From assembly GCF_021869535.1 (NCBI RefSeq), contig NW_026262581.1, positions 115,382,001 to 115,446,000 on the forward strand: a stretch of DNA of 64,000 nucleotides. The letters are read 5' to 3'. Positions within the stretch are counted from its first letter, which is position 1. Each line of letters starts with the position of its first letter. A model generated the notes under the pieces. That model was not told the origin of the DNA. It saw only the letters and a list, made by a program, of their open reading frames with translations, and did no database searches. A program made the position numbers and the translations under genes. Source of the stretch: Mytilus californianus (lineage: Eukaryota). Below are positions 33,412-55,345 of this stretch, piece after piece.

Positions 33412-33440
33412 ATGGAATCCAGCGTTGATGTCGTGGACAG
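33412..33440 (+). CDS. Roc-COR gene putative exon 1 (MESSVDVVD + AG)
   Basis: ATG in AAAATGG context; strong donor AG|GTAAGT; phase 2 fits the next exon. The frame is open upstream to a possible acceptor at 33336, so the true start could lie further 5'. Confidence 0.65.
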
Positions 33441-36400: not shown

Positions 36401-39400
36401 TTAGTAATGACTACTTGCCTTAATCGCACATGAAATAATCAGATCTATTTTTTAACAGCTTCGCTGCGGTACATACTATTGCAGTTCGCATATATAAGAT
36501 AAGATTTAGAAGACAACAGCATGAGAATGGAGGCGGGAGTGCTTCAATGAGATAACAACTAATATTGTTAGGAAAGATATCTTTCCACCATAAAATAGAG
36601 TTATAATAGTCACTGCACGTGCCCCAACAATGACTGAATACCATTCATTAGCAGGAGCTCTAAATTATTTGGAAATTTTGGACAAAGAAATAAAAAAAAG
36701 GCGTGGTTTTCATTTCATTATACGTTTAAACAAATGATTGTCCCAATCGTGTACATAAGAAATGGTGTTTGTATGAAATCGAGAGAAAAAAATGCTGATA
36801 TTTGACTTTTTAACAAATTATAAAAAATATGAAAATGGGACAACCAAAATCTTAAGTGGAAGAAGGTTTTACAAAGCAAAGACTGAAAAGATAGTCTTCA
36901 TCAATCAGTTACACATTGAAATATTCATTAGGCTCATGAATATATATTTAATTATATGACATACTTACTTATAGAGATTTTTATTTCAGTTAGCAAAATA
37001 GCAAGTTGTGAAATCTGGAATTTTTCTGACAAAAAGGTATGCTTTTTAACTGGCATGTATGATTTATGTGTGAACTTTAATTTCTTTTCGTCTTAAATTT
37101 AATGGAAACATTTTTTCATTATGTGTTAATCATTTAGTAAAAAAAATATATACATTACCAAACCGTACATAACTCCTTCAGACATTGGTTACCTAAGCCC
37201 ATTTTTGTTGTCAATCTTTTAACGTCTTTTTTTTTTTTTTTGCTCCTTGTGCTTAGCATTCAATCGGCTTTTTTCGTTGTTGTTGGTCTCGACAGTATTT
37301 GAAAAATAACCAGCAAAACAAAAGCTTTCAATGCCGCAAGCAAAATATTTTTGATCATTGCTCAACTGTTTGTGTTTTCTTGAAGATGCATGATGTAATG
37401 AATTTTCTGCTGTATCAAGCAAACTATAGTAAATTTATTAACGAATCAGGATTGTTTTACTTCCTCAATAAGAGCCTCATCGTTATATGCGCATAAAGTA
37501 AAGAGACGACACTGAAAACTGAAACTTTTGTTGTAATATATTTTCTTAAAGAATTAAAAGGTAGGTGATGCGGAAATATAGGCACATCCAACTTAGAATC
37601 CGGCATATATTGCCTCGCCACGTACGAGTTCGGCACAAGAATGGGTAGATATGTGTGCCGTCATTTCGGAAACACGCACTGTAGAATGCCCATTTGGAAT
37701 AAAAATCTGACTGGAAAGTTTCAATTACAGCAACTTTACTTTTTTGCATGGTCTTGAATAGCGAACTCATTTTGAAATGCAAACAACTTACGATGATATG
37801 AAAGGAAAACTCACAATAAGAATACTGACTGTACCACATTTCTTAATTTCTTTTTGTTTTACCGTCTTTCATGCATTGCAGGACACGCTTACCCTCTCGA
37901 CGGTCTCGTTCCTTTTGGGGGTCATGTAATTCCCTGAGGTTTTGTTTGTTACCTTGATTTTTCTTCAAAATTGATTTATGATATTTGAATATGGGTAAAC
38001 ACAGTAGTTGTTGAATAAATAGGTTGTAGCTAGGTTATCGTAACTCTAATAGATCGCTTTAACTATCAATGAATCTAAAGCTGAAATTTTTATTAAAAAG
38101 CATTTTCCTTGTGACAATTTTCTGAAATATTAACAGTGGCGCTATCCCTCACCCACAAATATTGTTGCTTAAATATTTTATATATACCATATACTTTTCA
38201 ACCAAAATTTCGATGGGTCAGAAGTGTCGCCATATATGAGAAAATAAAATAAGGTAGAAAATGATGAAGAATTTCTAGAAAAATAGACTTAAATGAAATC
38301 ACTTTCTATTTCAATCTGATACTTGTACAATTTATGAAGCCGATATACAATTTTTCTTATTATACTTTGAAAAATGATACATTTTGTAATACATACACAG
38401 TAGATTTACTCAAACAATTGAAGTTTGAAAAATGCACCCTTACAGGGCCGTTTATTGGGGTTACTGGCTTTACTCTTTTATCAGCAGTGATTACGTAGGT
38501 TTGACAGGTTCGAATTCTGGCAAAACGTATTTCTAAAGAGTACTTTCTATTTTCATTTTATTTTTGTATTTTGTAACTAGATGCAATACCAGCTAACATA
38601 AATGAATAGAGCCAAACAGCTGTGATGGAAATTAATTAATTGATAAAACACTTTCTTTATAAACATGACGTATTATCACATTTAAAATCTTTGAAAAAGG
38701 AATATATTATGTTTTTTTCAATGATAAATGTTTTACAGCTAAGCCAAGGAATATCTCAACTATTTATAAACAAGTGTGCCATTGTTATCATCATCGTTGA
38801 TAATGCAGACTTTAAAGCAACGGAAAAGATTGCCAGACTATGGAGAAATTTTGCTTTCAAGGTATATTTTGACATGTGATGATCCGAGAACGATAACAAA
38901 ATGTTTAGGATTGATAATATACACTGTTATCACTATCATATTAGTTATTTTTTTAAGTTGAAATACATGCAAGAATGTTAGCAGCAAGGCAATAACTACA
39001 TTCGTATTCAAAAGTATATCATATGGACGAAAGGGGCGAAGAGTATACGACAGTGAGACTGTAACTCAACAAAACAATAAAACCTCAAAACAAATATACA
39101 TATCCACAATGTCAAACAGCTCTATGTACGAAATAATTAGTTGTCTTATGGGGAGCCATAAGACAACTATCTACCAAAGTGTAAATGAAGAGGGTATACG
39201 CAGTTATAGGCCACCATGCGGTCTTCGACAATGTGAAAAAAAAACCCATACCGTATTGTCGACTATAAAATGTCACGACATGAAAAATGTGATACAATAC
39301 TAATGAGAAAACCAATTGTATAATTTATAACAAAACAATTTACGAAAAACAAATATGACAGAAAATGAACCAACGACAACCACTATACCATATTTCAAAT

Positions 39401-42400
39401 TCTTAATCACCCTGAGGCTAGACAAATTGTAAACTAAGCAAACGTTTCAAAGTCAATAGTCCACGACTGAGGGGGCGTGGTCAAATTATCTCAAATTGAA
39501 ATGAGATGATCCAATGCTAATACAACTGCAAACCAAATATCATTGACCTACCACTAGTGGTTCCTCATAAACTGACCTAATCACAAACTAATACATTGGT
39601 GATGACGACGCCGTCGGAAACAGCATGCCTATGTCTCGTTTTTGACTCCGTCAAGGCGAGACAAAAAAAGTATTGCACCAAAAAATGCTTGCAGATGCCG
39701 AAAGCTTATACGCTGATATAGAAATTCGTCTAGTCTAATGCAGACGGCTGCACTTTCTAGTGAATTTCACACAGCAACGCAAGTGCCAATAGACACATGC
39801 AACGCCTGAGATGACCTTGTTTGATGAATTTTACTACAGATAAAAAAGGAAAAATAAAAAAGGAAACATTTTAGTCGCGTGACTGTGTGAAATGATTTTA
39901 GTACCAAAAAATACAGAAGATAAGTATAATGGTTACCTTTAAAACACAAGAAAAAAAACCAAAAGATTATGTTAAATGACGCGTTTTAACCTTTTTTACT
40001 TCCTTAGTTAAATAACCATAAAATGTTCAAACGTTGCTTGCATGCATGTATTATCTATAGTCATTGAAGTTCAATCGTAGTTTTTAAATTATTCTTTTGA
40101 CCGAGTGTGGATTCGTATGGCGGGTGATGCATGTATAGCAGGATACGCTTACCCTGTCGACACACCCGTTCTTGCTCCTTTAGGAGTTCATGTGATTCCC
40201 TCAGTTTTTGGTTTGTTACCTTAATTTGTATTCTAAGTCGATTTATGAGATAAATATCGTTGTTTTAAGTTAATATAAGATAAGAAAATGTGGTATAATT
40301 ACCAAGTTAATATTCTAGGAAATACCTTCATAAATCATAATAAATTTTTGACAGCAAAATAGATGGAAAAATAGTTAGAAAAGTTTTCTTGTTTATCCAG
40401 GGTATTCAACATGTTATTATAGCAAATATATCATCAATTGTAACGAGCGATGTCGTACAGCAGACAGTGCAGATCTTTGAAGCTCTTGATGAAAGTCTTA
40501 ACACATTCAAGCAAAGTCAATCCCAGTAAGTAAAGTTGTAGTTAATTTAATTTTTTATAAACTTCACATTTAAATTTTTCCTTATAGACCAAAACGTTTG
40601 TCAAATCAAACGGTGAAAATGTTATCATACTTTAAAAATTTGTTTAGATTAAACAGAAAACGGGACAAACATTAATGAAAAAGTAAAAATACAATGAAAA
40701 GCTTCAATTTTGTAAACCATCGATGCAAGTAAATTCTCTTACCCAAAACGTTGACTGGGTGCGGAATTTAAAATGTTTCCCAAGTACAGAGAATAAACAA
40801 GACTATATATGATAGAAACATCACTGACACATTCAGAAATAAAACTTTCGTTCAACACAACGCAGAAAACTAAGTCAAAAACAACACGAACCTCCGCTGA
40901 AAGAAAAGTTACGTGAAAGCTTTCAAAATGTACTAGTTGCATGTGAGACAAATACCATTAATGCAATATCAAGTATATAAGTGGGAGAGAAAAATTTCTT
41001 CACCACTCAAGTGAAAGATCAAGGACGCACGCAATGCATAACATTGATTTGTGTTTTATACTTGATTTTAGAGTTAAAGAAACTCCAAGAAATTACCACA
41101 AATTACATACTGCTGAAGAAAAGGTAGGTAAATTAAACATGCTTTACTCTCCAAAATCGAAAAAGGTCGATGTTATACGAAATATAAGGGAATGTATTGT
41201 ATTATATAAATCAATTCCACGTTATTATGATTGATTCAGTGAATTTTCATTTTCAATATGTCGTTGTCTCTTGACAACGCATTATAAACAGCAGATGAAA
41301 ATTAACATTGACAGATTAAGGTAAAAATAATGAAAAACGGGAAACGAAAATTATCGTATTGTACCGGAAATGAGCACATTTTGCATTTGATCGCTATATT
41401 AGTAGTGCATTCGTGTTTTTTTTTAAAAGTTCTGTCAAATGAATACGAGTTTTCTTTAAGCAATTAACAAATTTCCCAGCAATTCGCGCTTTTTCTTGAA
41501 TATACATGTAAAAAAATTTGTGTAAAATAAATACTCTCTAAGACGTACATCAAAACATTTGGTTTGATTTTCAACCTTCTAACAATGAGCCAAATTTGTA
41601 TGTTTATTTTAATAATGAAAAAAGACATACACACAGTATTTTGGTTCCTGTGCAGTCTCTTGGTTCCGAAAAGTGAAATACAATGGAACAATGAAACTTT
41701 TAATATATTCATGAAAACAAACTAATTTACATCCTCGTCACTTGGTCTCTGTTGGCTAGTAGTCTCATTGGCAAATCAAACCAATCTTCTTATATTTTTT
41801 ATATTTGTTGAACCTTCATATAAACATAGAAATCATGTGTATTGCTTACAGGACGCACTTCCCGCTCAAGATATATATAAATTTGTAAGATTACTAAAAT
41901 AAAAAATGACCAGAGTAAGTATTACATTTTGATACTTGAAATTGACATAAAAACACTAATAGATAATTACTACCAAAGAAACTGATTTCAATCTTTTACA
42001 GGGGTTTCTGACAATATTAACAACTCTTTTAAAAGAAGAAAAAGACAAAGTGATTACAGAAATAGACGATCTTACAAGAATAAAAAATACTGTACTCAAA
42101 CAAAGAAAGGATGTCGTGTTCAGTTCTATACATGAATATCAAAATATTGTGGCACTAGTGAACATTGGAAATACGTTGAACCATTTAACCGCAAAGGTAA
42201 TTGTTCCAAAAGTTTGGTATTTTCGTAATGTAATTGAAATATACGATGTGCAATAATATAAATAGGAATAATTCTGGTAACACCAACCTAATAGTCCGCG
42301 CTGGTGTGGCGGTCATTTTCTGTATATTCAGCGTTCATGTAAAAATCTTTCAAAATACTTATAATAAAAGTTTTTTTCAGGCGTTGATGAACACAATATT

Positions 42401-45400
42401 TGGCACACATTTTTTTATGTTTAAGGTCGTTGAGGTTTTTAATGCTCTTCAACCTTGTAATTACTTCCTCCTTCCTGCTACTGAATTAAACTTATCATCG
42501 GGGTTGTACTTACTTCAGCAACACGACGGGTGTCACATGTGGAGCAGGATATGCTTACCCATTCTGGAGCACATGAGATCACCGCCGGTGTTTGGCGGGG
42601 GTTCGTATTGCTCAGTCTTTAGTTTTTTTTTCTTGTGTTTTGTATACTGCTGTTTTTCTTTAGGTCTGTTTTGTTTTTTGCCATGGCGTTGTCAGTTTAT
42701 TTTCGACTTATGAGTTTGTATGTTCCTTTGGTATCTTTCGCTTCTCTTTTTAATCTATGTTTGATGCGAGCGCCACTGATGGGTCCTGTGTATACAAAAA
42801 CACCGTCTGGCTTACTTTATTACTGTATAAAAATGTATCTTTGGTAACTTTTTTTCATTTAGGTCAATCAAAATGCTAGATGTTTGGAATGATATACAAG
42901 CTTTACAAAACTAGAAAAATTAGACATTTCTTTTCCAATCACATTTTGGTCTGTTTAGAGTTATTAACACTGATATATCATTTTAGGGAATAATACTCAG
43001 TCATGGATGTTACCATCACGGAGGTGAATTCATCTGCGTGAATCCGCAGCTGTTTCTTAAACTTGTCTATGCTATTCATGTTGACAGCTGTAACAAGACA
43101 TTTCATATTGCACCAAACAGATTCTGGCATCAAGACAGACCAGACAGGGAATCTTTGGTCAAAGTTTTAGAAGACATTCCAATTAATGGATTACTTCGAC
43201 AATGTCTATTACCACTACTATGGCAGGTAGTTTTTTACGATATCTTTCTTAAATTGTATTAGTACTACGTGTAACTTCGGGTATATTATTTATCACAATA
43301 ACAAACTGTACGAAACGTCAATTATTATCGGCTTAATCTATCAATGTGCTTATAGTAGGCGGTAATGATTTTAAATTTTTTTATATTTTTTTTATTTAAT
43401 AAGAATTTCTGTTCTTCATAAATACAATGAGAAAACATACCTTTTCAGCGGGTAGTTTTACACTTGTTATAAAATGAAAAGAAACAACACTTTATACATT
43501 GTATGCGTCCGAAGCTTTTGTAATAATGCGAAAGGTGTTGAATTCTATTTACAGGACTTGTTGTCTAATAAAGAACAAATTCTACTGGTATCTACTGAGA
43601 TGGAAAGATTTGGCCTTCTGATGCCCTATAAAAAGATGTCCATGTTTAGTGATGTAATCAGTTTAATGGATTATCCCCAATTGTCATCAGTCGACCAAAT
43701 GTCTCTCTTATTGATGGGGAAAATGAAAGACTTAAAACCGGTAACTTTTAGTAGATCGTATTATATGTTCTAACAATCAATAGGTATGGGAAAAAGTAAT
43801 TTTCCGAGGGCACTATCCGCCCAGTAACCAAATCATATTTTGTGAAAATTGTCATTTTATAATGGCGGGTGATGCAATCATAGCAGTAGACGCTTACTCT
43901 GTCGACGTACACTGTCTCGCGCTTTTTGAAGTTCATGCGATTCCCTCAGTTTCTGTTTGTTGTTTTGATTTGTCTCTGTCTAATCGATTTACGAGATTTG
44001 AACATCGGTAAACTACTGTAACTTATATTTATCAATTACGAGTTGGTGGAGAACTAAGAATTGTGACAAAAGAGATTATTACAATTTTACTGTTGTGAAC
44101 TCTCCATTTCTGTGCAGCAACGTTCCATCAGCGCCTGCATATGGATTATATCTCTTTCACTTGATACGATATTCAAGGGCTTGCGTTTACTATGATGATT
44201 CCTTCATATAGGGTTACTGCTTGCATCAAGTTTCAAATGGTAAAGTAGAAGTCATTCCTTCGATAATTTATCAGACGCAAACATGATTTGGTTAACCATT
44301 AAAAGTAATATCCTTTTCACAGATGACCACGGATATGTTCCACTTGTTGTAACCACAATTCCGTCCTCTTTTCCTTGGTTGTGACATTACCCAATGCTAC
44401 TTATCATCGTTTTTTTCTCCCTGAAACGAGTAACATGACAGTAGCCACTAGTAGAGCAGTAACTGCTCACCCTTCCGAAGCACCTGAGTTCACCCCCGGG
44501 TTTTAGTGGGGTTCATGTTGCTCACTCTTTAGTTTTATATGTAGTGCTTTGTTGTTGCTGTTTGTCTTGTCGGCGTTTTTTGTTATCGGAGTGGTTTTTG
44601 TTTCTAATTATGATTTTTGATTGGCCCTTGGTATTTCATCTCATTTTAAATGCAAGTGTACTAAACGTATAATTGCAATCCCTTTCAGTCAAAGTTGCCA
44701 TAAGCCGGTTTTGACTGTTCTGTTTAGGTCTTTTAGTTTTTGCTCTAAAAATAATTATAAATTATGATAATTTATTTAACAATATATAACATTAATCGAT
44801 CTTTTTGCAAATAATGACCATCATGTGAGCTGTGCACACCTAAAGTCACGTAATAAATAAAACAGTTGATATATAATATTCATTTTACAGTCCTTAAACT
44901 GGTATGAAGACCTACAGACATCTGATATACAACTGAACCTGAAAGTATCATTTCCTCAGGGATTACCACCAGGATGTTTAGAAAGATATATTGGTGCTGT
45001 ATATTTTGTTTATAAATATGTAAATAATTACTATTATGGATGGAGGTCTGGCATATTACTACGTATTAATGATGTAAGTTTTACCGAAAAGTAATTCTGA
45101 TATGAGATGACATTAGATGACCATGAGCCTTTTCTTGATGAAATGGAATAATCTAATTACAATCATATACGCTGCTGAATGTGATACACCTAAAGACATT
45201 AAAACGACTAAAATACTGTCGAATTTTACCTAGTCCTTTTTGATACATGTGTAAATATACATTTTGAAGGACTTTATATTTTTCTATTTTATATTTTCTG
45301 AAAGCGATTTGTAAGACGATGGTGTTAAAATGAAACGCCAAAATGTATATATAATTCTTTTTTTTATTTTAAGATTATAATTTATAAAATTACAAAAGTA

Positions 45401-48400
45401 AGCGTTCGATATTCATCTATTTCATAATCCATTTTTATCAACAATTCGTGAAGCATTAACAATTTTTTGTCGATAAATGTACAATAGTTGTTATTTATTA
45501 GGAAATGTACTAAGATTGTGTGCGAGTTGAGGATTGAAGACATATACTCGTTTGTGGATAGGTATGAAAAACTGTCGTTTTGTGTCAGTTTGAAAGTTGA
45601 CTGTTTAAAAAATAATGAAAAATGTTAATACTTGAATGAGCATGTATGATAATTGGAGTTAATTCCTTTCAGCAATGTAGAACGAGTTTCAGACTGAAGA
45701 AATAACCCCTCATTTTTTTAGTTGGTCATTTTACGTTTTTATGAAACCTTTTCTGAATTGTTGACTAATTTAGGTATCAGTTAAGTTTCTAGATCACACA
45801 AAATACACCAGGTAAATACTTTAGCAAATTGGATTAAATTACACTCAATGATGTGGGGTGATGTTCTTCTAGTGTTGTGTTCAACTGTTTTGGTTCTTAA
45901 ACATCCTTGGCTTTCAAATATTCGGCTTTAAGCGTACCTGATGAAGGAAAAGCTCTTCGGACGCATAAAACTTAAACGTGTTGTTTTGATTTTTTCGAAC
46001 GTAAAATACCGATTTCTGTGCGCATGAAATGTGTTTCTGTTAAAATCTTCTGTGTGTACGATGGAGAAAGTTCATGAAGCCAAAAAACAACAAAAAAAAT
46101 TAAAAAAAAAATTACGTTTTAGAGCATTAAAATCATACTGCTCTAAACAGTCAAAACATGATGTAGCTACAAGTAACAATGCCTTAGGTATTTGTAACAC
46201 TTAGAAAATGTATCATTCAATCAAGCAATACTTTACATTACCCACACACTGGACCCTGGACAGAATGGTAACCTCGGAACTGAAAGTTCGGCTGCAGCAT
46301 TACCTCACGGTTGTATTCGATCGAAACGTATGATTACGATTTCGGGTCAACAGAACGGTCAGTACCAAAAGTTTGGGAATCCAAATGTATAAAACGTCTG
46401 AAAACATAAAAAACTAGAAGGCTTTAAAAGAACAGCCAAACTGTATTAGGTCTACTTTTCTAAGGATTTTGCAACATTTTGTAAGCACAATTAAAACACT
46501 TTTTACCGGGACGAACAGATTCTGATCATGATGCAATATCAATATGAACCTTTATGTATAAACTATACCGATTCTCTGAGCCAGATTTTGAAAATAGGAA
46601 ATTTACAGACAAAAACAAATCATCAAAGATACCAGGCTTATAAATTTAAACGTCACACGCGCGTTTCGTCTATAAAATACTCATTAGTGAAGCTCTAATA
46701 AAAAAAGTTTAAAGGCCAAATAAAACACGAAATGATGTTAAAGTTACCAACTGTAGGCGTTCTAGAATGAGCAGAATCAATACCGTATAGCAAGCTATGA
46801 AATGCCCCGAAATGAAAACGAGAAAACTAACGGCCTGATTTATGTACAAAACAATAAACGAAATACAAATATGATATACAGCAACAAACGACATCCCTGA
46901 ATTACAGGCTCCTAAATTGGGACAGGTACTTACAGAATGTGGCGGGATGAAACATGTTTCGGGGGGGGGGGGGCAATTCTCTAACCTTAGACAGAGTTGT
47001 CAGCCAAAATGGTCCTAGCTTGTAAACCAAATTAAATCTTATCCGTACGTCTACGTTGGGTGGCTTTCCTTTGATCTTTAATTCATATCCTTTTTATTTA
47101 CTTTCAGGTTTATATCTATATATCAACACAGAATGAGTCTTTAGAGTATTTTGTCCGAACAGATATTGATTTATATCCTAGTTTTGAAGAAGCATGTAAA
47201 AAACTTTGGATGACTGTTGGTTTAGCACTGGATTGTTTTTTAAATCACGTTTCAATTTGGCCAGAACTTAATTATCAGGTAACAAATTAGATAAACGTTA
47301 TAGCAAGTTTGATGGATTTATATACTTACCAACATTAAATGATTAATATTCCTTTCTTCATTCATAAGTTCGTTTTGGGCGGCTAGGCATTTGCGGTATT
47401 TAGCAAAATCATTACTTCAAGATGCAGCAAATATTAAATAATTTGAGATATTTATTATGCATATTAATTCTATAACACTAGACATGTTTCATTATTTACC
47501 AAGAGGGGTTTCCATAATCAATAAAGGTAAGTTTTGAAATATTCGTCTGATATGTACGTAAATCCTCAGATTATTACTTTCGTTTTCACAAAAAAAAGTC
47601 AAAGAAAATGTTACAATCTACCGTTATGTATATATATATAAATAAGAAGATGTGGTATGATTGTCAATGAGACAACTTTCCACAAGAGACCAAATGACAC
47701 AGAAATTGACAACTATAGGTCACCGTACGGCCTTCAGCAATGAGTAAAACCCATACCGCATAGTCAGCTATAAAAGGCCCCGAAATGACAAATGTAAAAT
47801 ATTTCAAACGAGAAAACTAACGGCCTGATTTAAGTACAAAATAATGAACGAAAAATAAATATGATATACAGCAACAAACGACAACCTCTAAATTACAGGC
47901 TTCTGTCTTGGGACAGGCACATACAGAATGTGGTGGGGTAAAATTAGTTTGAAGGAGCCAACCCTCCCCTAACCTGGGACAGTGGTGTAACATTACAACA
48001 TAAGAACAAACTGTAAAAATCAGTTGAAAAGGGCTTGACTAATCAGATGGACACAAAGCAGAAATACATCTAACAAAAACACAGAGTGAACGTGGCAGGG
48101 TACTTATACATCACCACAACAAAAAGACATTGAGTACAGATCTGAGAGTACTCGCAGTTACTGACAGCTAGTTCAAAGCCAATAACAACTAATAAAAAAA
48201 TCATGCATCTAAGACTAAAATATCAATCAGTACACATCCAACATCCAATGGATTTAGTGTAAATACGTCATTAACAGTCAGAGAAAAAAACATGACCTTG
48301 TAAAATGCCAAGATACAGGTATCGACAGATTGTAGAGCCATGCATGTGCATATGTATATAAAAATACTATTTAGTTTGATTTTAATTTACTGATAACAAA

Positions 48401-51400
48401 ATCAATATTAATACCAATAAAAACAATATTCAAAGATCTAATTATAGTGTTGAATTGGTAACCTTTTAGAATAAGTTTATTTAAAGAATCGATAAGTTTA
48501 CATAGTTGCTTTTCATAAACTTGGTAAAAGGGATAGTTTTACATTTTTGTCCTCGGAAATTAGCAACAGAATTAGCCAAAAAGATCCTCATTCGCTTAAG
48601 ACATCTTGTTCCAAAATATATTTTTGGAAAGGCTGTAAGTCATATTCAAATATCAGTGTTAAGGTCTTAAAAGAAAATAATTTTGTAGTTTTTGAAAATT
48701 GTTCCATAATTGCAGAAAGCTTTAGTACCAAAATCATGAATTTTACTGACATCAGACAGAATAATATCTTGTGAAAATGGAAATAATGCTTTTAGTAGAT
48801 TAATAATACTTTTTCATTTTAAAAATCAAGTCGCCTTAATACCATCTCAGTACGAGTTCACAAATTAACTACTTAATAGACAGAACATAAACATTACCTC
48901 AGCTCATTGTTTAGCCTGGGTTAGAATATGACAAGGATTCGTATGTATAAAAATTTTTAAATTTGGAATATTTTTCGTCAGGTAGATTTGTTACAAAAAC
49001 GTGTCTAGTAAATATTAGAAAGTTGATTAACAACTTTCGTCATTTTTTCATATTTTTATTTAATTTGAATTAATTTGAAGGTATACCTGTCTGCTGATGG
49101 AGAACAATTTCGATCAAGCAGTGTAATTGGTGCATGTTCCTTGCCCTCCATGTTGACAAAAAGATACAATAGGAAAGATAACACGGAAGAAGAATTAGAA
49201 ACGAAGGTTAAATTATTGTTTCCATTTCAAGGTAATAATGTAATAATCTTCATCTTTTATTAACTTTAGATTAAACGCGAAAAATACTATGTGTGGGAAA
49301 ATAATAAGATGTCAACTCATGTATTTGTTTGTAAAAAAAATGTCTGCTAGCAAATTAAGATGTCAAAACTGCTCATTTGTACAACTAGTAAATTATATCT
49401 AAAATATATATTTGAAGTCTACGCTTATATGTTTATAATATTGGCATTATGTTCGAGTGGCCAAGCTATACAAAGTCGCTTATCTACAGACGACTTTAAT
49501 TGCATTCCGTGCCAAGGTATTCAACTTTTGTGAATATGACTTCGTACGGAAAGATGGTTCGGTCTGCCAGAGTCGATTCAGAATAGTTTTTGCTTGCCCG
49601 ATACTTGGTACAAAAGATCATTATAATAAGTGTCGTACCTTTTTTAACTCCAATATGTTTCGAAACGTAGCAGAAAAAAATAAGAAGAAATACAGCAAGT
49701 TCTTCCTTAACTTTTTTGTAATGGGAAAGACATTAATGACCCTAATAAATTTACATGCATGGTTAAAATCATTTTCACAGGCTAACGTTTTTTGCCAAAT
49801 CCAGTCAACTTAAACATTCAAATCACAGATAATCACATGCAGAATAAACCGACATGTCTTTGTAAAAAAAAACCGGAAAATCTCAAACTCAAATGACACA
49901 TCATAAAATAAGGTAACAGTAGTTTTAAGACAAATTAAGTTATCAAACACAAACTGAGGGAATCGCATGAACTCCAAAAGAAGCGAGACTGGGCCCGGTG
50001 CGTCGACAGGATCCGCATCTCATGCTATGCATGCATCACCCGGTCTGATAATTCAAAATATCACAATCGGGAATAGGACAGAATCGGTAAAATTGCAGGT
50101 CAGACGACATTTTGCGAAAACATGTAGCTAGCAGGTTGAGATGAACCTATTTGTGATGATTTCAGTCGTTTTTCCTTATAACTTGGTTTCTGTAGTTTTT
50201 ATAGCATACTCCTGCTAATGAAGTCCGAACAGTGTAAACATGCAAATCAGTTGAGATGTGTAATTGCCACATGGGACAGAGGTTAAGTAACTGCTGATAA
50301 ATGGGAAGTTGACGATTGGAAAATTGAAATATTATGTTGTCATAGATTCTAGTTTGAGGTCGCCCATCTCTGTCAATATCGAGGAAAAGATCAAGATATG
50401 ACGTTCACTGGGAAATATGAGATACACTCACTTACTAAAACGTGGATTATTGAGTGACAGGTCATCATCAAAATATCTGAATGTGAAATTAAAGAACTTT
50501 GCAAGATGTGTTCTCTTGTTTATTTTTGAGAAGGTTTTATTATTTATTATTTATTTATGCATTTCTCTGTGCTGAGCGTTCTTGCGTTTGTTTGTAATGT
50601 ATTCCTGTCACGTAGTGTTGTCATTTTAGCGATATTTTTTAACATTGCCATATAAGCGGAAGGTTTGGCTAGCCATAAAACCAGGTTCAACCAGTCATTT
50701 TTTCCTAAAATGTCCTGTACCAAGTCAGGAATATGGCAGTTGTTATCAAATAGTCCGTTTCTATGTATGTTGGCCTTGGTTTTTGTTGCAGTTCAGTGTT
50801 TCTGTTGTTCCGTTGTTTTCCTTTTATAGTTGATGTGTTTCCCTCGGTTTTAGTTTGTAACCCGGATTTGTTTTCTCTTAATCGATTTAGGACTTTTGAA
50901 CAGCGGTATACTACTGTTGCCTTTATTTGTATGAATTCTGCTTCATATGAGTGCATAAACAAGTCGGAATTTTTTGGAATCAGTGCAGTTCTTCACAAAG
51001 TAAGATTTTGTCACAATCTACAGGACGAAATTGTATCTACGAACCCCATTTTTGTAGAAAAAATGCTCTGTTTAAAGAGACGAAGTATTCAATTTTTCAT
51101 TTGAACATTGGGAATAATAGTGTACAGCGTAGAAAATCAAAAATGATATTACTGCAAAATTGTAAAGATTGTTACTGAAGATTTTACGGTAGATCTTTAG
51201 AATTTTGAAGAATCCAGATCTGATTGACGCCGCATGTTGAATATAATACCCCATCACAATATTTTAGGAAGCTATCTTTAATTGTCAAAATAACAGCGGT
51301 AAGAACTTTTGAAAGATGTTTAGTCAAACATTTCGACGAGCCGATTATATATCGTTCTTTATAAAGATTTTTGTGAAGTTTAGATATCACGTATTAAAGA

Positions 51401-53808
51401 CGGGAGATCTTCATAAACGAGACAATGTAAAAAGATTCAAATCTAGATACAAAAAACCTAAACATCGGACATTTAAAAGAAAAGCTTTTGCCAATACGAT
51501 CTTCCAAAAAATAGGGACTGATAGTAGCAAATCTTTTTTCAAATCATTGATATATAAATTTCGCTTAAAGTTGGTATGTGCGATTTTTTTCTTCTTTTTT
51601 GATAAAAAATGTATACTCACATTATTCAAGATTCTACTATGGCCCTGGTATTCATATTTGATCTTTATTTACATATTAAGGGATATTGTATCATCTACTT
51701 TATTACTATTTGGTGAATATACCCGAGGAAAAACCTACGCTCCTTTACATGTCCGATTTTAAAAGTGCTCCGTTTTCGTGTGTTTTATTTAAAATGCCGT
51801 TTGTACGAAAATTACCGGTTGTATGGTTAGATGATTTCTTGAATTTGACCTACCGAATTTAGACTTATCACCGGATTTGTACTTACATGAGCAACACTAC
51901 GGATGCCACATGTGGAGCAGGATCTGCTTACCCGTCAGGAGCACCTGAGATCACCACCAGTTTTGGTGGGGTTCGTGTTATTCAGGCTTTAGTTTTCTAT
52001 GTTGAGTTTGGTGTACTGTTGTTTGTCTGTTGGTCTTTTTCTTTTTTAGCCATGGCGTTGTCCGTTTATTTTCAACTATGAGTTTGAATGTCCCTTTGTT
52101 ATCTTGTGCCTCTCTTTTGTATAGTCAGTACAAACACGATGTTAGAAAAGCTATTAAAAGCAATTAGATCATTTTTTCCAAATTTCTAGAGGACTTTGAA
52201 TTGTGCTCTTAAAGTACGATCTCACCACACGATTACATATTTTAGTGAATTTTTTTTTTTTAAAAAGGCAACCTGTATTACCGAACGAAGAACTATTGTT
52301 TCTGAAAAAAGGAAAATAACAGACACAGAAGATAAAAGTGATTATAAGGTTGATATGTGTATTTTAGATTTTGAAGTTACAGATGAAAAAGATGTAATTC
52401 AACAATGGACACTTTATTTAAAAAGAGAAACAGGGAGGTCATTGGAAATAGATATAAAAGAAACACAGCCGGCTGTAGAATTAGAAATGATAAAACCAAA
52501 AACAAGTATAAAGAAAAACAAGGTATTTTCATTTTTCAGATACATATGAGTATTGATAGCTCACTCTTTTGAAAGAGATAGGCTGATGAATAACCTGATA
52601 ATTTACATATAGTTGTCAACATTAATATATTTGTAATTTTAATTTTAATATCTATAAATGAGCACGAATTACAAATAAGGGTTCATCTCTAAACAGATGA
52701 TCTTATACTGCTTGTTATAATGCTTACAGTTAATTTCAAATATTTTTTTTTGGAAATTAGATTACTATTTATTTCATTTATAAACTGTATTTATGTTTTA
52801 CTGGTTTTTTTTCAAAATATAATTTAAGCGTAAAGATATTACTTGGGATATAAAGACCGCTGATAAACATACTAGCTCGAGTACAGAAAGGATACCTTCA
52901 CAATCGAATATTAAACCAGTCAAATGTAGTACAAACGATGCTTATCTACCATTGAGAATAGATAAACCTACAGTTAAACAAAAGTCTACGAAAACAGAGG
53001 ATGTAGCAAAAACTTCAACTGAGCCCACATATGATAATAACATAGGACGTTGTAAAGTAGATGTTGAAATGGATATTCAGAAGGTGGTTGGATCATTTGT
53101 TGCGACTATCTTAGCTACAGCTGTGGCTGCTTATATAGGAGAAGAAAGTGGTAGACGAGGAAAATGGACAACGTACCAGGTAAAGCTATGTTTGCATTAT
53201 AGAAAATTGGTGTAGGTGTGCAAAAAAAGGAGTGATATTTGCGATAACATAAGTATTTTTATTTTAATGATATAAAAAGAAACATTTAGCAAGAATCAAA
53301 ATGAGACATAATAAGATTATCTTTTGTTCCGATGATATATAATGAATATACTTTAGGCTTAAAAAAGTTTAATTATATCGTCATGAAAGAGGTAAGCAGG
53401 CGCTTTTCTTGCTTATTTTAATCATAAATTCTTGTATGTGATTAAAAAAAAACGAGGTTGCTGACATCAGTCAATGTATTTCCAACATTTCTTTTTATTA
53501 ATTTTTGCATTTAATGCATTTTGACACATTTTTTATTCTCAATTTCATTTTCTGTATAATGAATGTTTCTTTTATTATTATCCAAGGCATCAGTTGCATC
53601 AGAAATGGCAGAAGCTATCATGTTTGTTAATTCAAATGACGTCATGGCCGCAGCAAACACAATTATAAACACCGTAGAAAAAGCTGAAAAACCAGACTCT
53701 TCCAATACACGTCAATGTTGTCTAGATGGATCTTTATGTTACTGTGGGCATAACAAAGATCATAAGGAACAGAGTAGTAAATTCAGTTCAATTTGTACAC
53801 TATTGTAA
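33412..53808 (+). CDS. Roc-COR (ROCO-like) protein with degenerate GTPase motifs and C-terminal CaaX; ~15 exons, ~830 aa: join(33412..33440,36019..36185,36990..37036,38739..38861,40401..40525,41072..41123,42002..42196,42987..43226,43555..43740,44891..45073,47108..47278,49081..49231[or 49239],52268..52522,52829..53179,53587..53808)
   Basis: Exons 1-12 chain with consistent phases (2,1,0,0,2,0,0,0,0,0,0) and GT-AG sites, and exons 13-15 chain in phase 0. Roc-like motifs: RLNVFVFGGTFSERQDL, EIWNFSDKKLSQGISQLFINKCAIVIIIVD, QHVIIAN. COR-like motifs: LNHLTAKGIIL...FICVNPQLFLKLV, MERFGLL, FPQGLPPGCLERYI...WRSGILL, WPELNY, VKLLFP. The domain assignment is by eye from family motif spacing. The exon 12/13 junction is unresolved. 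Confidence 0.78.
34818..34925. repeat. 3 x ~34-bp tandem repeat (AGACAACACTA.GCCCCAAAACGAT.AAAAA)
   Basis: Directly visible; lies in a tail-type repeat remnant. Confidence 0.8.
34946..35630 (+). repeat. Identical 118-bp direct repeats (34946-35063 and 35513-35630)
   Basis: Base-by-base comparison shows ACACGACAAAG...CATACTTAA identical in both copies, offset 567. Confidence 0.93.
35064..35512 (-). mobile_element. 5'-truncated L2/Crack-like LINE 3' fragment with (TTAC)n tail
   Basis: The minus strand encodes ...RPNTNSMK*SFTYSSSIFWNKLPNEIKCCEILDTFKQRC..., the typical ORF2 C-terminus. This is followed by a 3' UTR, AATAAA and TTACTTACTTAC. The insert is flanked by identical 118-bp direct repeats. 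Confidence 0.85.
36019..36185 (+). CDS. Roc-COR exon 2 (degenerate P-loop region, RLNVFVFGGTFSERQDLIRVTL...IYTLP)
   Basis: Polypyrimidine tract plus TTCAG; donor GTAAGG; phase 2 to 1. Confidence 0.85.
36990..37036 (+). CDS. Roc-COR exon 3 (VSKIASCEIWNFSDKK; switch II-like)
   Basis: Acceptor ATTTCAG; donor AG|GTATGC; 47 nt. It converts phase 1 to 0 exactly as needed, and WNFSD aligns with the Roc motif WDFAG. Confidence 0.85.
38739..38861 (+). CDS. Roc-COR exon 4 (LSQGISQLFINKCAIVIIIVD...RLWRNFAFK)
   Basis: Acceptor TTTTACAG; donor AG|GTATAT; 123 nt; phase 0 to 0. Confidence 0.85.
39440..39668 (+). mobile_element. Probable 3' portion of another Helentron-type non-autonomous element
   Basis: Ends in the hairpin TGTCTCG-TTTTT-GAC-TCC-GTC-AAGG-CGAGACA followed by an A run; short (GAC)n precedes it. 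Confidence 0.5.
40120..40250 (+). mobile_element. Related tail-type repeat family (copies 37860-37990 +, 43860-44030 +, 49930-50050 -)
   Basis: GGCGGGTGATGCA...GGATACGCTTACCCTGTCGAC...GGAGTTCATGTGATTCCCTCAG is shared between copies. Confidence 0.7.
40401..40525 (+). CDS. Roc-COR exon 5 (GIQHVIIANISS...FKQSQS)
   Basis: Acceptor GTTTATCCAG; donor GTAAGT; phase 0 to 2. Confidence 0.85.
41072..41123 (+). CDS. Roc-COR exon 6 (QVKETPRNYHKLHTAEEK)
   Basis: Acceptor GATTTTAG; donor AG|GTAGGT; 52 nt; phase 2 to 0, bridging exons 5 and 7. Confidence 0.75.
42002..42196 (+). CDS. Roc-COR exon 7 (GFLTILTTLLKEEKDK...TLNHLTAK)
   Basis: Acceptor CTTTTACAG; donor AG|GTAATT; 195 nt. Confidence 0.88.
42520..42750 (+). 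mobile_element. Non-coding Penelope-associated tail repeat (other copies 51850-52120, 56485-56725)
   Basis: GGAGCAGGAT.TGCTTACCC.T..GGAGCAC.TGAGATCACC...GGGGTTCGT.TTGCTCAGTCTTTAGTTT is conserved between copies. Confidence 0.75.
42987..43226 (+). CDS. Roc-COR exon 8 (GIILSHG...FICVNPQLFLKLV...LLPLLWQ; COR-A-like)
   Basis: Acceptor CATTTTAG; donor AG|GTAGTT; 240 nt open. Confidence 0.88.
43555..43740 (+). CDS. Roc-COR exon 9 (DLLSNKEQ...MERFGLLMP...DLKP)
   Basis: Acceptor TATTTACAG; donor GTAACT; 186 nt. Confidence 0.87.
44045..44650 (+). mobile_element. Penelope-like RT C-terminus plus 3' tail
   Basis: GACAAAAGAGATTATTACAATTTT...CCTGCATATGGA...GATACGATATTCAAGGGCTTG corresponds to DKRD..F..VN.PFL.SN.P.APAYG...IRYSRAC. 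It is followed by the same tail. Confidence 0.8.
44891..45073 (+). CDS. Roc-COR exon 10 (SLNWYE...FPQGLPPGCLERYIG...WRSGILLRIND; COR-B-like)
   Basis: Acceptor CATTTTACAG; donor GTAAGT; 183 nt. Confidence 0.9.
45930..45965 (+). ncRNA. Degenerate hammerhead-like repeat, second family (related copies 16135-16160 +, 24943-24988 -, ~61045-61095 +)
   Basis: AGCGTAC-CTGATGA-AGGAAAAGCTCTTC-GGACGC: the stem I arms GCGT../..ACGC flank an intact CUGAUGA, but stem II or GAAA is damaged in every copy. Confidence 0.5.
46645..46697 (-). ncRNA. Degenerate type I hammerhead ribozyme (retrozyme/Penelope-associated fossil)
   Basis: The minus strand reads GAGCTTCA-CTAATGA-GTATTTTATAGAC-GAAA-CGCGCG-TG-TGACGT. 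The core layout matches CUGAnGA...GAAA with a palindromic ACGCGCGT stem III, but the core has G>A and the cleavage triplet is GUG. Confidence 0.7.
47108..47278 (+). CDS. Roc-COR exon 11 (VYIYIS...VSIWPELNYQ)
   Basis: Acceptor CTTTCAG; donor AG|GTAACA; 171 nt. Confidence 0.88.
47640..48480 (+). mobile_element. Abundant unclassified non-autonomous interspersed repeat, family A (longest copy)
   Basis: Begins ATAAGAAGATGTGGTATGATTG.CAATGAGACAACT...; includes GGCTCCTGACTTGGGACAGGCACA...CCTGGGACAGTGGTGTAACA. Other copies: 2020-2345(-), 3751-4540(+), 9620-10250(+), 23800-24000(+), 33775-33975(-), 39085-39390(+), 46740-47000(+), 50630-50930(-), 58340-58970(+). Confidence 0.88.
49081..49231 (+). CDS. 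Roc-COR exon 12 (VYLSADG...KVKLLFPFQ)
   Basis: Acceptor AATTTGAAG. The donor AG|GTAATA at 49232 is phase 1; an alternative AT|GTAATA at 49240 is phase 0. Confidence 0.8.
50150..51620 (-). mobile_element. Penelope-like RT, larger decayed fragment interrupted by another repeat
   Basis: Encodes SKLHKNLYKERYIIGSSKC.TKHLSKVLT...CGVNQIWILQNSKDL (51390-51190) and FNFTFRYFDDDLSLNNPRF...LDID.DG..QT.IYD (50500-50330). Confidence 0.82.
52268..52522 (+). CDS. Roc-COR gene exon 13 (ATCITERR...SIKKNK)
   Basis: Long poly-T tract plus AAAAAG acceptor; donor AG|GTATTT; 255 nt open. Confidence 0.72.
52829..53179 (+). CDS. Roc-COR gene exon 14 (RKDITWD...VVGSFVATILATAVAAYIG...WTTYQ)
   Basis: Acceptor AATTTAAG; donor AG|GTAAAG; 351 nt open in AT-rich DNA. 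Confidence 0.8.
53587..53808 (+). CDS. Roc-COR gene terminal exon 15 (ASVASEMAE...RQCCLDGSLCYCGH...FSSICTLL*)
   Basis: Acceptor TTATTATCCAAG; phase 0; stop TAA; ends in CTLL (CaaX). Confidence 0.8.
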   Translation, partial: ASVASEMAEAIMFVNSNDVMAAANTIINTVEKAEKPDSSNTRQCCLDGSLCYCGHNKDHKEQSSKFSSICTLL

Positions 53809-54869
53809 ATTAGATTACATTATATAAATGATTTGTTTGAACAAACATTTCAGCGACAGAAGCCGATTTTCACATGCCTATCTTATGTAAATAATTGCAA
53901 TATACGACACACAGAACATTGCTTTTGTTGCCGGAAAGTCATTTTTTGTCATAGTGTGAATCAAAAGTAAAGTCTCATAATGTACTATTTGCCACAAAGA
54001 CCAAGAGTTAATAATATAAATATTGTCTACTCTACTTCAACTTCGTTTAAGTTTAGACTTTTAGTATATTAAAATGTATTTTTCTGGTATACTAGTATAA
54101 CATAATTGTTTTTATCAAGTTATGAATAGTTTTATGCAATTTCAATACTGTCTTGATGTATATAAATATTGAATAAAGAAAAATGCACTGGTTGTTTGAA
54201 CCTGATAAAATGTCCAACCAGTATATCATCATGCCAATTCTGTGAGATAAAAGTTGTTAACCGACAAAAAAGACCCAATGATTGAACATTCAGAACGACG
54301 TAAAGAATGAGACCAGGGCCCGTATGCACAAAGCTACTTAAGTTAAGATTTGTTCCAAACGGACGGATTTTTCTACATGTCCAACGATAAATTAGTATTA
54401 CGATTGGATATCTTAACTTAAATAGCTTTATGCTGGTTACACGTAAGACCTCTTCTGTTCTTTTTTAAATCAAAGTCATTGTTACAGGACGGTATACGAA
54501 ATTGACGAACGGAACTTTATGTGTGCTCATACTTAGTCTCATTGTGCAGATTTTCATGCGAAACCGTCTTTTAAAGGTCCGTCATGTAGAGAAACATTGC
54601 TTAACAATAAAAATATTATTTCTTTTGTGATGACGGCGAATAGATGTTTTCATCTTGCTGGTTTGTAACTATACTTCTAAAAGTTATTTTGAAACAACAG
54701 CTTAACATGAGAGTGAAAACAATCGAAATTGAAACTACATACACGTGCGTTGCCTGGATAAGCCTCGCATCACATTTCATAAGGTTTTAAAGTACATACA
54801 GAAGCAAATAAGATTACCGCTAGTACGAATGAAGTTGGATGTATTCTAATTTATGTCGCTTTCATGTTT

Positions 54870-55345
54870 CAAATTGAGAATGGAAATGGGGAATGTATAT
54901 GTGTCAAAGAGACAACAACCCAACCAAAGAGCATAAAACAGCCCAAGGCCACCAATGGGTCTTCGAGAAAATCCCGCACCCGGAGGCGGGCTTCAGCTGG
55001 CCCCTAAACAAAAATGTGTACTAGTTCAGTGAAAATGGACGTCACACTAAACTCTGAAACATATAAATGAACTAAAATAAAAAAAAAAAAAACAAGACTA
55101 ACAAAGACCAGAGGCTTCTGAATTGGGACAGGCGCAAAAATGCGGCGGGGTTAAACATGTTTTGTGAGATCTCTACCCTCCCCCTATACCTCTAGCCAAT
55201 GTAGAATAAACAAACACACAGCAGTACGCACAGTAAAACTCAGTTTAAAAGAAGTGTGAGTCCGATGTCAGAAAAGGTAACAGAAGAAATTAAGCAAAAT
55301 GACAATGATACATAAATTAACAAAGGACTACTAGCAGTTACTGAC
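54870..55345 (+). mobile_element. Interspersed repeat family B (other copies 1250-1505 -, 4345-4420 -)
   Basis: AATTGAGAATGGAAATGGGGAATG...GTCAAAGAGACAACAACC...GAGAAAATCCCGCA.CCGGAGGCGGGCT is shared with the reverse complement of 1370-1500. Confidence 0.82.

What the first reader, a model, noticed from the sequence alone, without database searches (positions are those of the whole stretch)
53084..53808. C-terminal membrane-targeting cassette: hydrophobic helix, Cys cluster and CaaX box CTLL
Seen: the protein ends ...FSSICTLL*. It is preceded by RQCCLDGSLCYCGH and, one exon earlier, by the 19-aa apolar stretch VVGSFVATILATAVAAYIG (53084-53140). Established: CaaX with X=Leu is the geranylgeranyltransferase-I signal used by Rho/Rac-type small GTPases, and nearby cysteines are often palmitoylated. 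I do not know of prenylation in ROCO proteins. Inference: a prenylated, membrane-anchored pseudo-ROCO.
Basis: partly seen in the sequence, partly recalled or inferred. Interest (0 to 1): 0.7.

Follow-up and report, generated by a model that had tools for sequence, protein, structure and literature searches.

The report
Conserved lipid-anchor tail on mussel Roc-COR protein
A mussel gene for a switch-like protein of the Roc-COR type ends in a short signal (Cys-x-x-Leu) that normally gets a greasy lipid attached, and distant mussel relatives keep this signal, so the protein probably works tethered to a membrane; the nearby greasy helix is also real but is unlikely to be a simple membrane-spanning anchor.

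Summary
Spliced transcript contigs from two organisms join 52829-53179 to 53587-53808, and the protein ends ...FSSICTLL*. The ending is under selection. Three diverged copies end CTLL, CLLL and CVIL, with synonymous Leu-codon changes and a stop at the same place. dN/dS is 0.13 for the last 11 residues against 0.92 for the linker.

I rebuilt the gene as 15 exons encoding 798 aa, starting at an ATG at 33413. A relative's 525-kb contig carries the exons in the same order. The protein starts directly with a degenerate Roc-like domain, followed by COR-like exons. COR support is weak: a sub-threshold Pfam COR-B hit and a language-model lead. There is no signal peptide and no LRR array.

Geranylgeranylation of Cys795, probably reinforced by S-acylation of the Cys cluster, is the best reading. 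The 19-aa apolar helix is nearly invariant and only marginally hydrophobic, and it has a small-xxx-small face. If both protein ends are cytosolic, it cannot span the bilayer once. A monotopic or packing helix paired with the equally conserved second helix is more likely.

No lipid or localisation was shown here. This is a new variant of a known kind. The scan has noted CaaX tails on other immune-type proteins of this genome.

The parts
33413..33441 (+). Predicted first coding exon: ATG, MESSVDVVD plus 2 bases, donor CAG|GTAAGT. No signal peptide.
   Evidence: The ATG context AACAAAATGGAAT, the 9 codons and the donor are conserved in the relative L018. No RNA evidence.
36019..36185 (+). Roc-like exon 1 with a degenerate P-loop (FVFGGTFSERQDLI).
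   Evidence: The homologue in L018 is 48% identical, E 1.5e-11. No Pfam or PDB hit.
36990..37036 (+). Roc-like exon 2 (SKIASCEIWNFSDKK; the DxxG position reads NFSD).
   Evidence: CEIWNFSDKK is 91% conserved in L018.
38739..38861 (+). Roc-like exon 3.
   Evidence: Homologue in L014/L018, E 3e-6.
40401..40525 (+). Exon 5 of the model.
   Evidence: Homologue in L014/L018, E 1e-3.
41072..41123 (+). Small exon, predicted only from splice sites and phase.
   Evidence: No cross-species hit.
42002..42196 (+). Predicted exon, phase 0-0.
   Evidence: No cross-species hit at E<=1.
42987..43226 (+). COR-A-like exon.
   Evidence: 59% identical in L014/L015, E 3e-26. In the Atlas feature search, 33 of 40 nearest named clusters are mollusc COR-A/COR-B. 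Pfam finds nothing.
43555..43740 (+). COR-region exon (…EMERFGLLMPY…).
   Evidence: 78% identical in L014, E 2e-25.
44891..45073 (+). COR-B-like exon (…FPQGLPPGCLERYIG…YGWRSGILLRIND).
   Evidence: Pfam COR-B is the only hit: E 0.13 here, 0.021 and 0.051 for the two orthologous exons, profile positions 3-43 of 145. 69-73% identical in relatives.
47108..47278 (+). Exon, phase 0-0.
   Evidence: RNA-like run X1 holds 100% of its words and many organism-B RNA-like runs hold 50%. Homologue in L014, E 1e-16.
49081..49231 (+). Exon.
   Evidence: Present in the spliced transcript contigs of X1 and X5.
52368..52522 (+). Exon.
   Evidence: Present in the spliced transcript contigs. Weak homologue in L011/L018.
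52829..53179 (+). Penultimate exon: RKDITW, a fast-evolving S/T/K-rich linker, the apolar helix and the loop EESGRRGKWTTYQ.
   Evidence: AlphaFold2: residues 1-69 disordered, one helix at 71-114 with pLDDT 71-85.
53084..53140 (+). Apolar helix 1 (aa 694-712), with small residues at every fourth position (G3 A7 A11 A15 G19).
   Evidence: Kyte-Doolittle 1.95 and summed Hessa scale +1.3 kcal/mol. 15 of its 19 residues are identical in the 38%-identical relatives. The 36-column helix+loop block is 67% identical to that relative and has dN/dS 0.07 against the L007 copy.
53587..53685 (+). Helix 2 region (aa 726-758, ASVASEMAEAIMFVNSNDVMAAANTIINTVEKA), one of the most conserved stretches of the protein.
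   Evidence: 70-89% identical among diverged copies. dN = 0 against L007.
53716..53745 (+). Cys cluster CCLDGSLCYC (Cys769, 770, 776, 778).
   Evidence: The CC...C.C pattern is kept but the spacing varies: CCNCGC, CCNSGC, CCVNGTLCYC.
53794..53808 (+). CaaX box CTLL (Cys795) plus the TAA stop.
   Evidence: Variants are CTLL, CLLL and CVIL, all followed at once by TAA.
53809..54092 (+). 3' UTR with ATTAAA at 54068-54073.
   Evidence: The X1 contig ends at 54092.

Best explanation
The last two exons encode the conserved C-terminal membrane-binding module of a 798-aa cytosolic Roc-COR-like pseudo-GTPase of a mussel.

Inferred pathway:
- The protein is made on free ribosomes.
- GGTase-I attaches geranylgeranyl to Cys795 of CTLL.
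- The usual -aaX cleavage and carboxyl-methylation follow at the ER.
- The Cys cluster 17-26 residues upstream is then S-acylated, which locks the tail onto a membrane.

The nearly invariant apolar helix (aa 694-712) and the equally conserved helix 2 (aa 726-758) form one unit. This unit packs as a hairpin or oligomer interface, or dips into the cytosolic leaflet. It does not cross the bilayer once.

Shown here: the gene structure, transcription, the sequence, and purifying selection on both helices and on the C-a-a-L ending. Inferred: the lipidation, the topology, and which membrane is targeted.
For: Transcription and splicing:
- Spliced contigs in two organisms and stranded reads confirm the last four exons and the stop.

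Conservation of the ending:
- It reads CTLL (window and a Mytilus galloprovincialis-sample copy), CLLL (13 allelic variants, Lau Basin and other samples) and CVIL.
- a2 is coded CTA/TTA/CTG/ATT and X is coded TTG/CTA. TAA follows directly in every copy, and the 3' UTRs are unrelated.
- dN/dS against the L007 copy: last 11 residues 0.13, helix 2 0.0, helix 1 plus loop 0.07, linker 0.92.

Fit to the prenylation rules:
- GGTase-I targets CaaL/I/M. CTIL and CVIL were fully geranylgeranylated and CLLL alternately prenylated in a humanised yeast system (PMC11152559).
- The 11 residues before the Cys are mostly small or hydrophilic (HKEQSSKFSSI), as the PrePS rule asks (PMC1175975). They have low pLDDT.

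Cytosolic N-terminus:
- The conserved first exon reads ME(S/Y)S..D, followed directly by the Roc-like strand. No other hydrophobic segment exists in the 798 aa.

Precedents:
- FBXL2 is palmitoylated in a prenylation-dependent way on Cys next to its CaaX (PMC9988375).
- ANKRD22 has a lipid anchor, and its predicted single-pass helix is in fact a monotopic hairpin (PMC8478909).
Against: - No lipid, localisation or topology was measured.
- Position -1 is Ile or Val, whereas GGTase-I substrates prefer Ser or Lys there.
- The Cys cluster lies 15-26 residues from the CaaX Cys, further than in Ras, RhoB or FBXL2.
- The apolar helix passes the classical Kyte-Doolittle threshold (1.95), and AlphaFold2 draws it as one long helix, as it does for true membrane spans.
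- Helix 2 is too polar to form the second arm of a membrane hairpin.
- I could not fold helix 1 and helix 2 together, because no reference holds the spliced sequence.
- The first exon and several middle exons lack RNA evidence.
Confidence: 0.58

Rival explanations
1. The apolar helix is a true single-pass anchor. The Roc-COR part faces the cytosol, and the last 86 residues (helix 2, Cys cluster, ending) lie in the lumen or outside the cell. The conserved C-terminus is then a binding epitope or part of a disulfide-bonded mini-domain, as in KASH tails, and is never prenylated.
For: - Kyte-Doolittle 1.95 over 19 residues, and it is the only such segment in the protein.
- AlphaFold2 gives a long continuous helix.
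- The Cys-rich stretch could form disulfides.
- Conservation at the exact C-terminus also occurs in lumenal KASH peptides (my own knowledge).
Against: - The three variants CTLL, CLLL and CVIL vary exactly as the CaaL rule allows.
- Cys number and spacing vary (3-4 Cys, with indels), which is unlike a disulfide-bonded fold.
- The charged flanks (0 on the N side, +1 on the C side) do not favour an N-in/C-out orientation.
- The apolar run is only 18-19 residues, and the summed Hessa scale is +1.3 to +4.3.
- Every residue of the helix is conserved, unlike a plain anchor.
Confidence: 0.15
2. The module is a regulated membrane-inserting or oligomerising effector. The prenyl tail pre-positions the protein on a membrane. 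A conformational change of the Roc-COR part then releases the small-xxx-small helix, which inserts and self-associates to form a signalling platform or a pore.
For: - G3, A7, A11 and A15 are invariant on one face of helix 1.
- Helix 1 and helix 2 are the most constrained parts of the tail.
- The Roc-like motifs are degenerate but conserved, which suggests a scaffold or switch rather than an enzyme.
Against: - Purely inferential.
- No similarity to any known pore-forming or executioner domain: Pfam, the Atlas search and the PDB search find nothing.
- No expression or phenotype data.
Confidence: 0.12
3. The CaaX-like ending is not modified. It is a hydrophobic C-terminus kept for folding or stability, and membrane contact, if any, comes from the helices alone.
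For: Ile or Val at position -1 is not the preferred residue. There is no experimental evidence for lipidation.
Against: - Cys(-4) and Leu(-1) are invariant with synonymous codon turnover, and the stop position is fixed despite indels upstream.
- The observed boxes are ones shown to be prenylated in other proteins.
Confidence: 0.1

Closest known systems
Doubly lipidated CaaL tails of small GTPases and FBXL2 (RhoB CKVL, Rap2B CVIL, R-Ras, FBXL2 CVIL)
   Same: A C-terminal Cys-aliphatic-aliphatic-Leu box with upstream cysteines and a flexible hydrophilic linker. The CVIL and CLLL boxes found in the relatives are literally those of known GGTase-I substrates.
   Different: The cysteines lie 15-26 residues from the CaaX Cys instead of 1-10. 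There is no polybasic stretch. The tail is attached to a 798-aa Roc-COR-like protein and follows two conserved hydrophobic helices.
ROCO proteins (LRRK1/2, DAPK1, MFHAS1, Dictyostelium and bacterial Roco)
   Same: The order Roc-like domain then COR-A/COR-B-like region. There is a weak Pfam COR-B hit at the expected place, and mollusc COR clusters are the nearest Atlas neighbours.
   Different: - No LRR, ankyrin, kinase or WD40 parts.
- The P-loop, DxxG and NKxD positions are degenerate (FVFGGTFSERQ, NFSD).
- No Pfam Roc hit.
- It carries a CaaX tail. I found no paper reporting a CaaX tail on a ROCO protein.
Prenylated innate-immune proteins (GBP1/2/5, OAS1 p46 with CTIL, ZAP-L)
   Same: Large cytosolic proteins placed on endomembranes by a C-terminal CaaX box. 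CTIL is almost the same box as CTLL (the assignment to OAS1 and the GBP and ZAP examples are my own knowledge).
   Different: The domains are unrelated, and no immune role has been shown for this gene.
ANKRD22-type lipidated monotopic hairpin proteins
   Same: A cytosolic lipid anchor combined with a segment that predictors call a single-pass helix but that does not cross the membrane (PMC8478909).
   Different: ANKRD22 is N-myristoylated and its hairpin is longer. Here the apolar run is only 19 residues and the partner helix is polar.

Membership tests
GGTase-I CaaX substrates | Cys exactly four residues from the C-terminus of the real transcript | tested here: met
   CTLL followed by TAA, in spliced transcript contigs. 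The same holds in all relatives.
GGTase-I CaaX substrates | X = Leu (or Ile/Met/Phe) and an aliphatic a2 | tested here: met
   X = L in all copies, and a2 = L, L or I. The rule is stated in PMC11152559 and PMC1175975.
GGTase-I CaaX substrates | A flexible, small or hydrophilic linker at positions -1 to -11 | tested here: inconclusive
   HKEQSSKFSSI is mostly hydrophilic and has low pLDDT, but Ile/Val at -1 and Phe/Leu/Ile at -4 are hydrophobic. The PrePS predictor is not available here.
GGTase-I CaaX substrates | The C-terminus is exposed to the cytosol | tested here: inconclusive
   There is no signal peptide in the conserved first exon, but an apolar helix lies 86 residues before the end.
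GGTase-I CaaX substrates | The isoprenoid is actually attached | not testable with these tools
   This needs metabolic labelling or mass spectrometry.
ROCO proteins | A Roc GTPase domain with G1-G5 motifs | tested here: not met
   No Pfam or PDB match for the Roc-like exons. The motifs read GGTFSERQ, NFSD and VDNAD. The degenerate forms are conserved in the relative.
ROCO proteins | A COR domain directly after Roc | tested here: inconclusive
   Pfam COR-B is the only hit of one exon and of its two orthologues, but at 12.5-15.1 bits against a cut-off of 27. The Atlas search gives COR-A/COR-B neighbours. The joined protein could not be scanned.
Tail-anchored or single-pass membrane proteins | A hydrophobic segment long and apolar enough to span the membrane | tested here: inconclusive
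   Kyte-Doolittle is 1.95 in the window and 1.52-1.82 in relatives. The summed Hessa scale is +1.3 to +4.3. The uncharged run is 18-19 residues.
Tail-anchored or single-pass membrane proteins | For tail anchors: the segment lies within about 30-40 residues of the C-terminus | tested here: not met
   86 residues follow the helix.
Dual prenyl/palmitoyl tails | Cysteine(s) within about 10 residues upstream of the CaaX Cys | tested here: not met
   The nearest upstream Cys is 17 residues away in the window and 15 in the CLLL copy.

The most novel reading that the evidence does not exclude
A lineage-specific Roc-COR pseudo-GTPase uses a geranylgeranyl tail to sit on a membrane. It carries a previously undescribed two-helix effector module whose invariant small-xxx-small helix inserts and oligomerises on activation. 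That would be an MLKL/HeLo-like membrane-executing output attached to a ROCO scaffold in mussel immunity.
Probability: 0.1. Interest if true: 0.85.

Novelty: new variant of a known kind. Interest (0 to 1): 0.55.

Why it matters
How ROCO proteins such as LRRK2 reach membranes is a central question, and the known cases rely on partner GTPases. A Roc-COR-type protein with its own conserved lipid anchor would be a natural example of constitutive membrane tethering in this superfamily.

It also adds to a pattern in this mussel genome. According to earlier notes of this scan, which I did not check, other immune-type proteins there (a STAND protein, a GIMAP) also end in CaaX boxes.

The two-helix module in front of the anchor has no family assignment and is one of the most conserved parts of the protein, so it is probably the functional output. 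The clash between a predicted membrane-spanning helix and a conserved CaaX box gives a clear, cheap experiment on topology.

Tried and rejected
Searches that found no full-length or wider relatives:
- A profile search of 1.84 billion representative proteins with the tail exon returned only three short ORF fragments and no full-length annotated protein.
- Word searches are limited by query length and returned only exon-sized fragments. The search with the COR-A-like exon found nothing.
- A metagenome scan with the tail alignment found nothing.

Family and structure searches on single exons:
- Pfam on single exons gave nothing relevant, except COR-B below threshold.
- PDB sequence searches with four single exons and one exon profile gave only chance hits.
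- An Atlas search with the tail exon and with the 43534-43740 exon gave nothing usable.
- A regular-expression scan found no LRR array on the + strand beyond what the - strand shows.

Gene-model methods that failed:
- A codon-usage score trained on the four confirmed exons did not separate other exons from noise.
- My acceptor weight matrix scored the confirmed acceptors poorly. I therefore relied on donors, reading phase and cross-species colinearity.

Structure prediction:
- AlphaFold2 of the last exon alone was of low confidence (pLDDT 54.6).
- Folding helix 1 and helix 2 together, and scanning the joined 798-aa protein against Pfam, were left out. The spliced sequence has no reference, and long sequences may not be typed.

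Interpretations rejected:
- A type I receptor reading (ectodomain, span, cytosolic tail) was considered and rejected once the conserved first exon showed no signal peptide.


Full report
**1. Observation**

- The apolar stretch VVGSFVATILATAVAAYIG lies at 53084-53140.
- A GT donor follows 53179, and an AG acceptor precedes 53587.
- The last exon encodes ...RQCCLDGSLCYCGHNKDHKEQSSKFSSICTLL, followed by TAA at 53806-53808.

I laid public reads on 49100-55000. One RNA-like contig of organism A (1188 nt) and one of organism B (1243 nt) cover 49100-49229, 52366-52519, 52826-53177 and 53585-54092 (to 54041 in organism B), and skip the introns. After resolving the few bases that fit on either side of each joint, the canonical GT-AG exons are 49081-49231, 52368-52522, 52829-53179 and 53587-53808.

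Raw stranded RNA reads lie on these exons almost only with the first mate on the minus strand, which places the RNA on the + strand. Depth is low, about 5 in 6% of the run. ATTAAA at 54068-54073 precedes the contig end at 54092.

**2. Conservation of the tail**

Relatives exist only as short ORF fragments on genomic contigs. The copies are:
- A copy 82-86% identical in DNA. It comes from shotgun metagenomes of Mytilus galloprovincialis gills (PMC11729891; loci L007-L009). It ends ...LSSICTLL.
- A copy 52-55% identical over this exon. It comes from a Lau Basin 'Abe' hydrothermal plume metagenome and several other samples. It ends ...ISSVCLLL or ...ISAVCLLL.
- A further copy, 54% identical, that ends ...LSSVCVIL.

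Among 13 allelic variants of the CLLL copy, all but one keep the tail. The exception is a single-contig frameshifted form.

At codon level a2 is CTA, TTA, CTG or ATT, and X is TTG or CTA. TAA follows at once in every copy, and the 3' UTRs cannot be aligned.

In organism B, five of the seven listed differences in the last-exon coding region are synonymous. The other two fall in one codon and together make a Val-to-Ile change. The only listed difference near the box (53787) is synonymous. Not all differences were listed.

Segment identities among the three diverged lineages:

| Segment | Identity |
|---|---|
| Helix 2 | 70-89% |
| Cys-containing linker | 22-34%, with indels |
| Last 11 residues | 45-64% |

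dN/dS between the window and the L007 copy, at an overall dS of 0.29:

| Segment | dN/dS |
|---|---|
| S/T/K-rich linker | 0.92 |
| Helix 1 plus loop | 0.07 |
| Helix 2 | 0.0 |
| Cys linker | 0.21 |
| Last 11 residues | 0.13 |

Selection is therefore concentrated on the two helices and on the ending.

**3. Fit to the prenylation rules**

GGTase-I targets CaaL/I/M. In a humanised yeast system CTIL, CVIL, CIIL and CVLL were fully geranylgeranylated, and CLLL was prenylated by either enzyme (PMC11152559). The PrePS study adds a requirement for an 11-residue flexible, small or hydrophilic linker, with Ser or Lys preferred at -1 for GGTase-I (PMC1175975). Here the linker is HKEQSSKFSSI. It is mostly compliant, but Ile or Val sits at -1.

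The Cys cluster keeps the pattern CC...C.C with variable spacing. It lies 15-26 residues from the CaaX Cys, further than in the classic dual-lipid tails. S-acylation is plausible but is the weaker inference.

**4. What gene this is**

Starting from the confirmed exons, I searched upstream for donors with an open frame in the right phase. This gave a chain of 15 exons in which every junction is GT-AG and every phase fits. The coordinates are listed under parts, and the product is 798 aa.

Independent support for the model:
- The RNA-like run X1 did not cover the intron 53237-53433. It holds 100% of the sampled words of the predicted exon 47108-47278, and RNA-like runs of organism B from several studies hold 50%.
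- Cluster members of the fragments led to a 525-kb contig of the 38-78%-identical relative. On it, in the same order and strand within about 16 kb, lie homologues of the first exon, three Roc-like exons, the exon 40401-40525, four COR-region exons, exon 52368-52522 (weakly), and the last two exons.
- The first exon is conserved: the ATG context AACAAAATGGAAT, nine codons, two extra bases and a GT donor.

The protein therefore starts ME(S/Y)S..D.R and runs directly into LNVFVFGGTFSERQDLI. There is no signal peptide and no LRR array.

**5. Is it a ROCO protein?**

The Roc-like exons have no Pfam or PDB match. The positions of the P-loop, DxxG and NKxD read GGTFSERQ, NFSD and VDNAD. These degenerate forms are conserved in the relative (FVFGGVFSERQELI; CEIWNFSDKK at 91%), so the degeneration is old and stable.

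For COR:
- The exon 44891-45073 and its two orthologues each hit only Pfam COR-B, at profile positions 3-43 of 145. E-values are 0.13, 0.021 and 0.051, all below the cut-off.
- For the exon 42987-43226, 33 of the 40 nearest named Atlas clusters are mollusc COR-A or COR-A/COR-B clusters. This is a lead, not a test.

I could not scan the joined protein. I regard 'Roc-COR-like pseudo-GTPase' as moderately supported and formal ROCO membership as open. No paper in the held library reports a CaaX box on a ROCO protein.

**6. The apolar helix and the topology problem**

Helix 1 (aa 694-712) is the only segment of the 798 aa above the Kyte-Doolittle threshold (1.95; next best 1.57). It is marginal on the Hessa scale as I recall it: +1.3 kcal/mol in the window and up to +4.3 for the 19-mer in relatives, whose uncharged run is only 18 residues.

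15 of its 19 residues are identical in relatives that share only 21% identity in the linker just upstream. Gly3, Ala7, Ala11 and Ala15 form an invariant small-residue face. That pattern points to specific helix packing rather than to a generic anchor. AlphaFold2 of the exon alone gives a disordered linker and one long helix.

If the Roc-COR part is cytosolic, a single span would place helix 2, the Cys cluster and the CaaX box on the far side of the membrane, out of reach of GGTase-I. Both the helix and the box are under strong constraint. The consistent solution is that the helix does not cross the bilayer once. It either packs with helix 2, or with copies of itself, or inserts monotopically. 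ANKRD22 is a precedent: it is a lipid-anchored protein whose predicted single-pass helix proved to be a monotopic hairpin (PMC8478909).

The rival reading is a true span with a lumenal tail whose exact C-terminus is a binding epitope. It remains possible at about 15%.

**7. Verdict**

The sequence observation is confirmed and is not chance. The CaaX reading is well supported by conservation and by known enzyme specificity, but it is unproven biochemically. The 'cassette' needs correcting: helix and prenyl group cannot both act in the way first imagined.

This is a new variant of known kinds, namely a CaaL lipid anchor attached to a Roc-COR-type scaffold and preceded by an unassigned, highly conserved two-helix module.

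Earlier notes of this scan report CaaX tails on a STAND protein and a GIMAP of the same genome. I did not test those.

Noticed in passing
window 19822-20025 (+): An exon encoding the C-terminal part of a universal stress protein domain (Pfam Usp, E 1.6e-16). It belongs to a separate gene upstream of the Roc-COR-like gene.
   Followed up: partly
window 25261-29614 (-): A non-LTR retrotransposon remnant in several broken ORFs (RVT_1 E 3e-9; Exo_endo_phos E 0.004). It lies between the Usp gene and the first exon of the Roc-COR-like gene.
   Followed up: partly
window 50676-51069, 51858-52251, 54222-54418, 54813-55000: Read and contig pile-ups thousands of times deeper than the exons, in all four runs. 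These are high-copy repeats inside the intron and 3' flank. ORFs of the type ...GAGSAYPSGAPEITTSFGGVRV... and ...GCHMWSRICLPILEHMRSPPVFGG... recur at 42234-42710, 44327-44669, 51863-52078 and 56441-56776.
   Followed up: no
window 33266-33452 vs L018 5682-5869: The block around the start codon, which includes about 145 nt upstream of the ATG, is 75% identical in DNA to the distant relative. Most introns do not align at all. It is a candidate conserved 5' UTR or core promoter.
   Followed up: partly
P0018 (cluster of P0002): One variant of the CLLL copy, seen on a single contig, diverges after ...THGC and ends early without the Cys cluster or the CaaX box. It is either a frameshifted allele or an assembly error.
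   Followed up: no
P0026 (cluster of P0008), loci L015-L017: A public source names the intron-read-through ORF that covers the helix-1 exon 'ribosomal protein S24E'. This is an evident misannotation of a prokaryote-style gene call on mussel DNA in metagenomes.
   Followed up: no
L015 13379-16050: An LTR-retroelement gag-protease/integrase ORF pair lies about 4 kb downstream of the relative's tail exon.
   Followed up: no
L007-L009 vs window 52734-53817: The copy from M. galloprovincialis samples is only 82-86% identical in DNA, whereas organism B transcripts are about 98% identical. It may be a paralogue or a deeply diverged haplotype. Both keep CTLL.
   Followed up: partly
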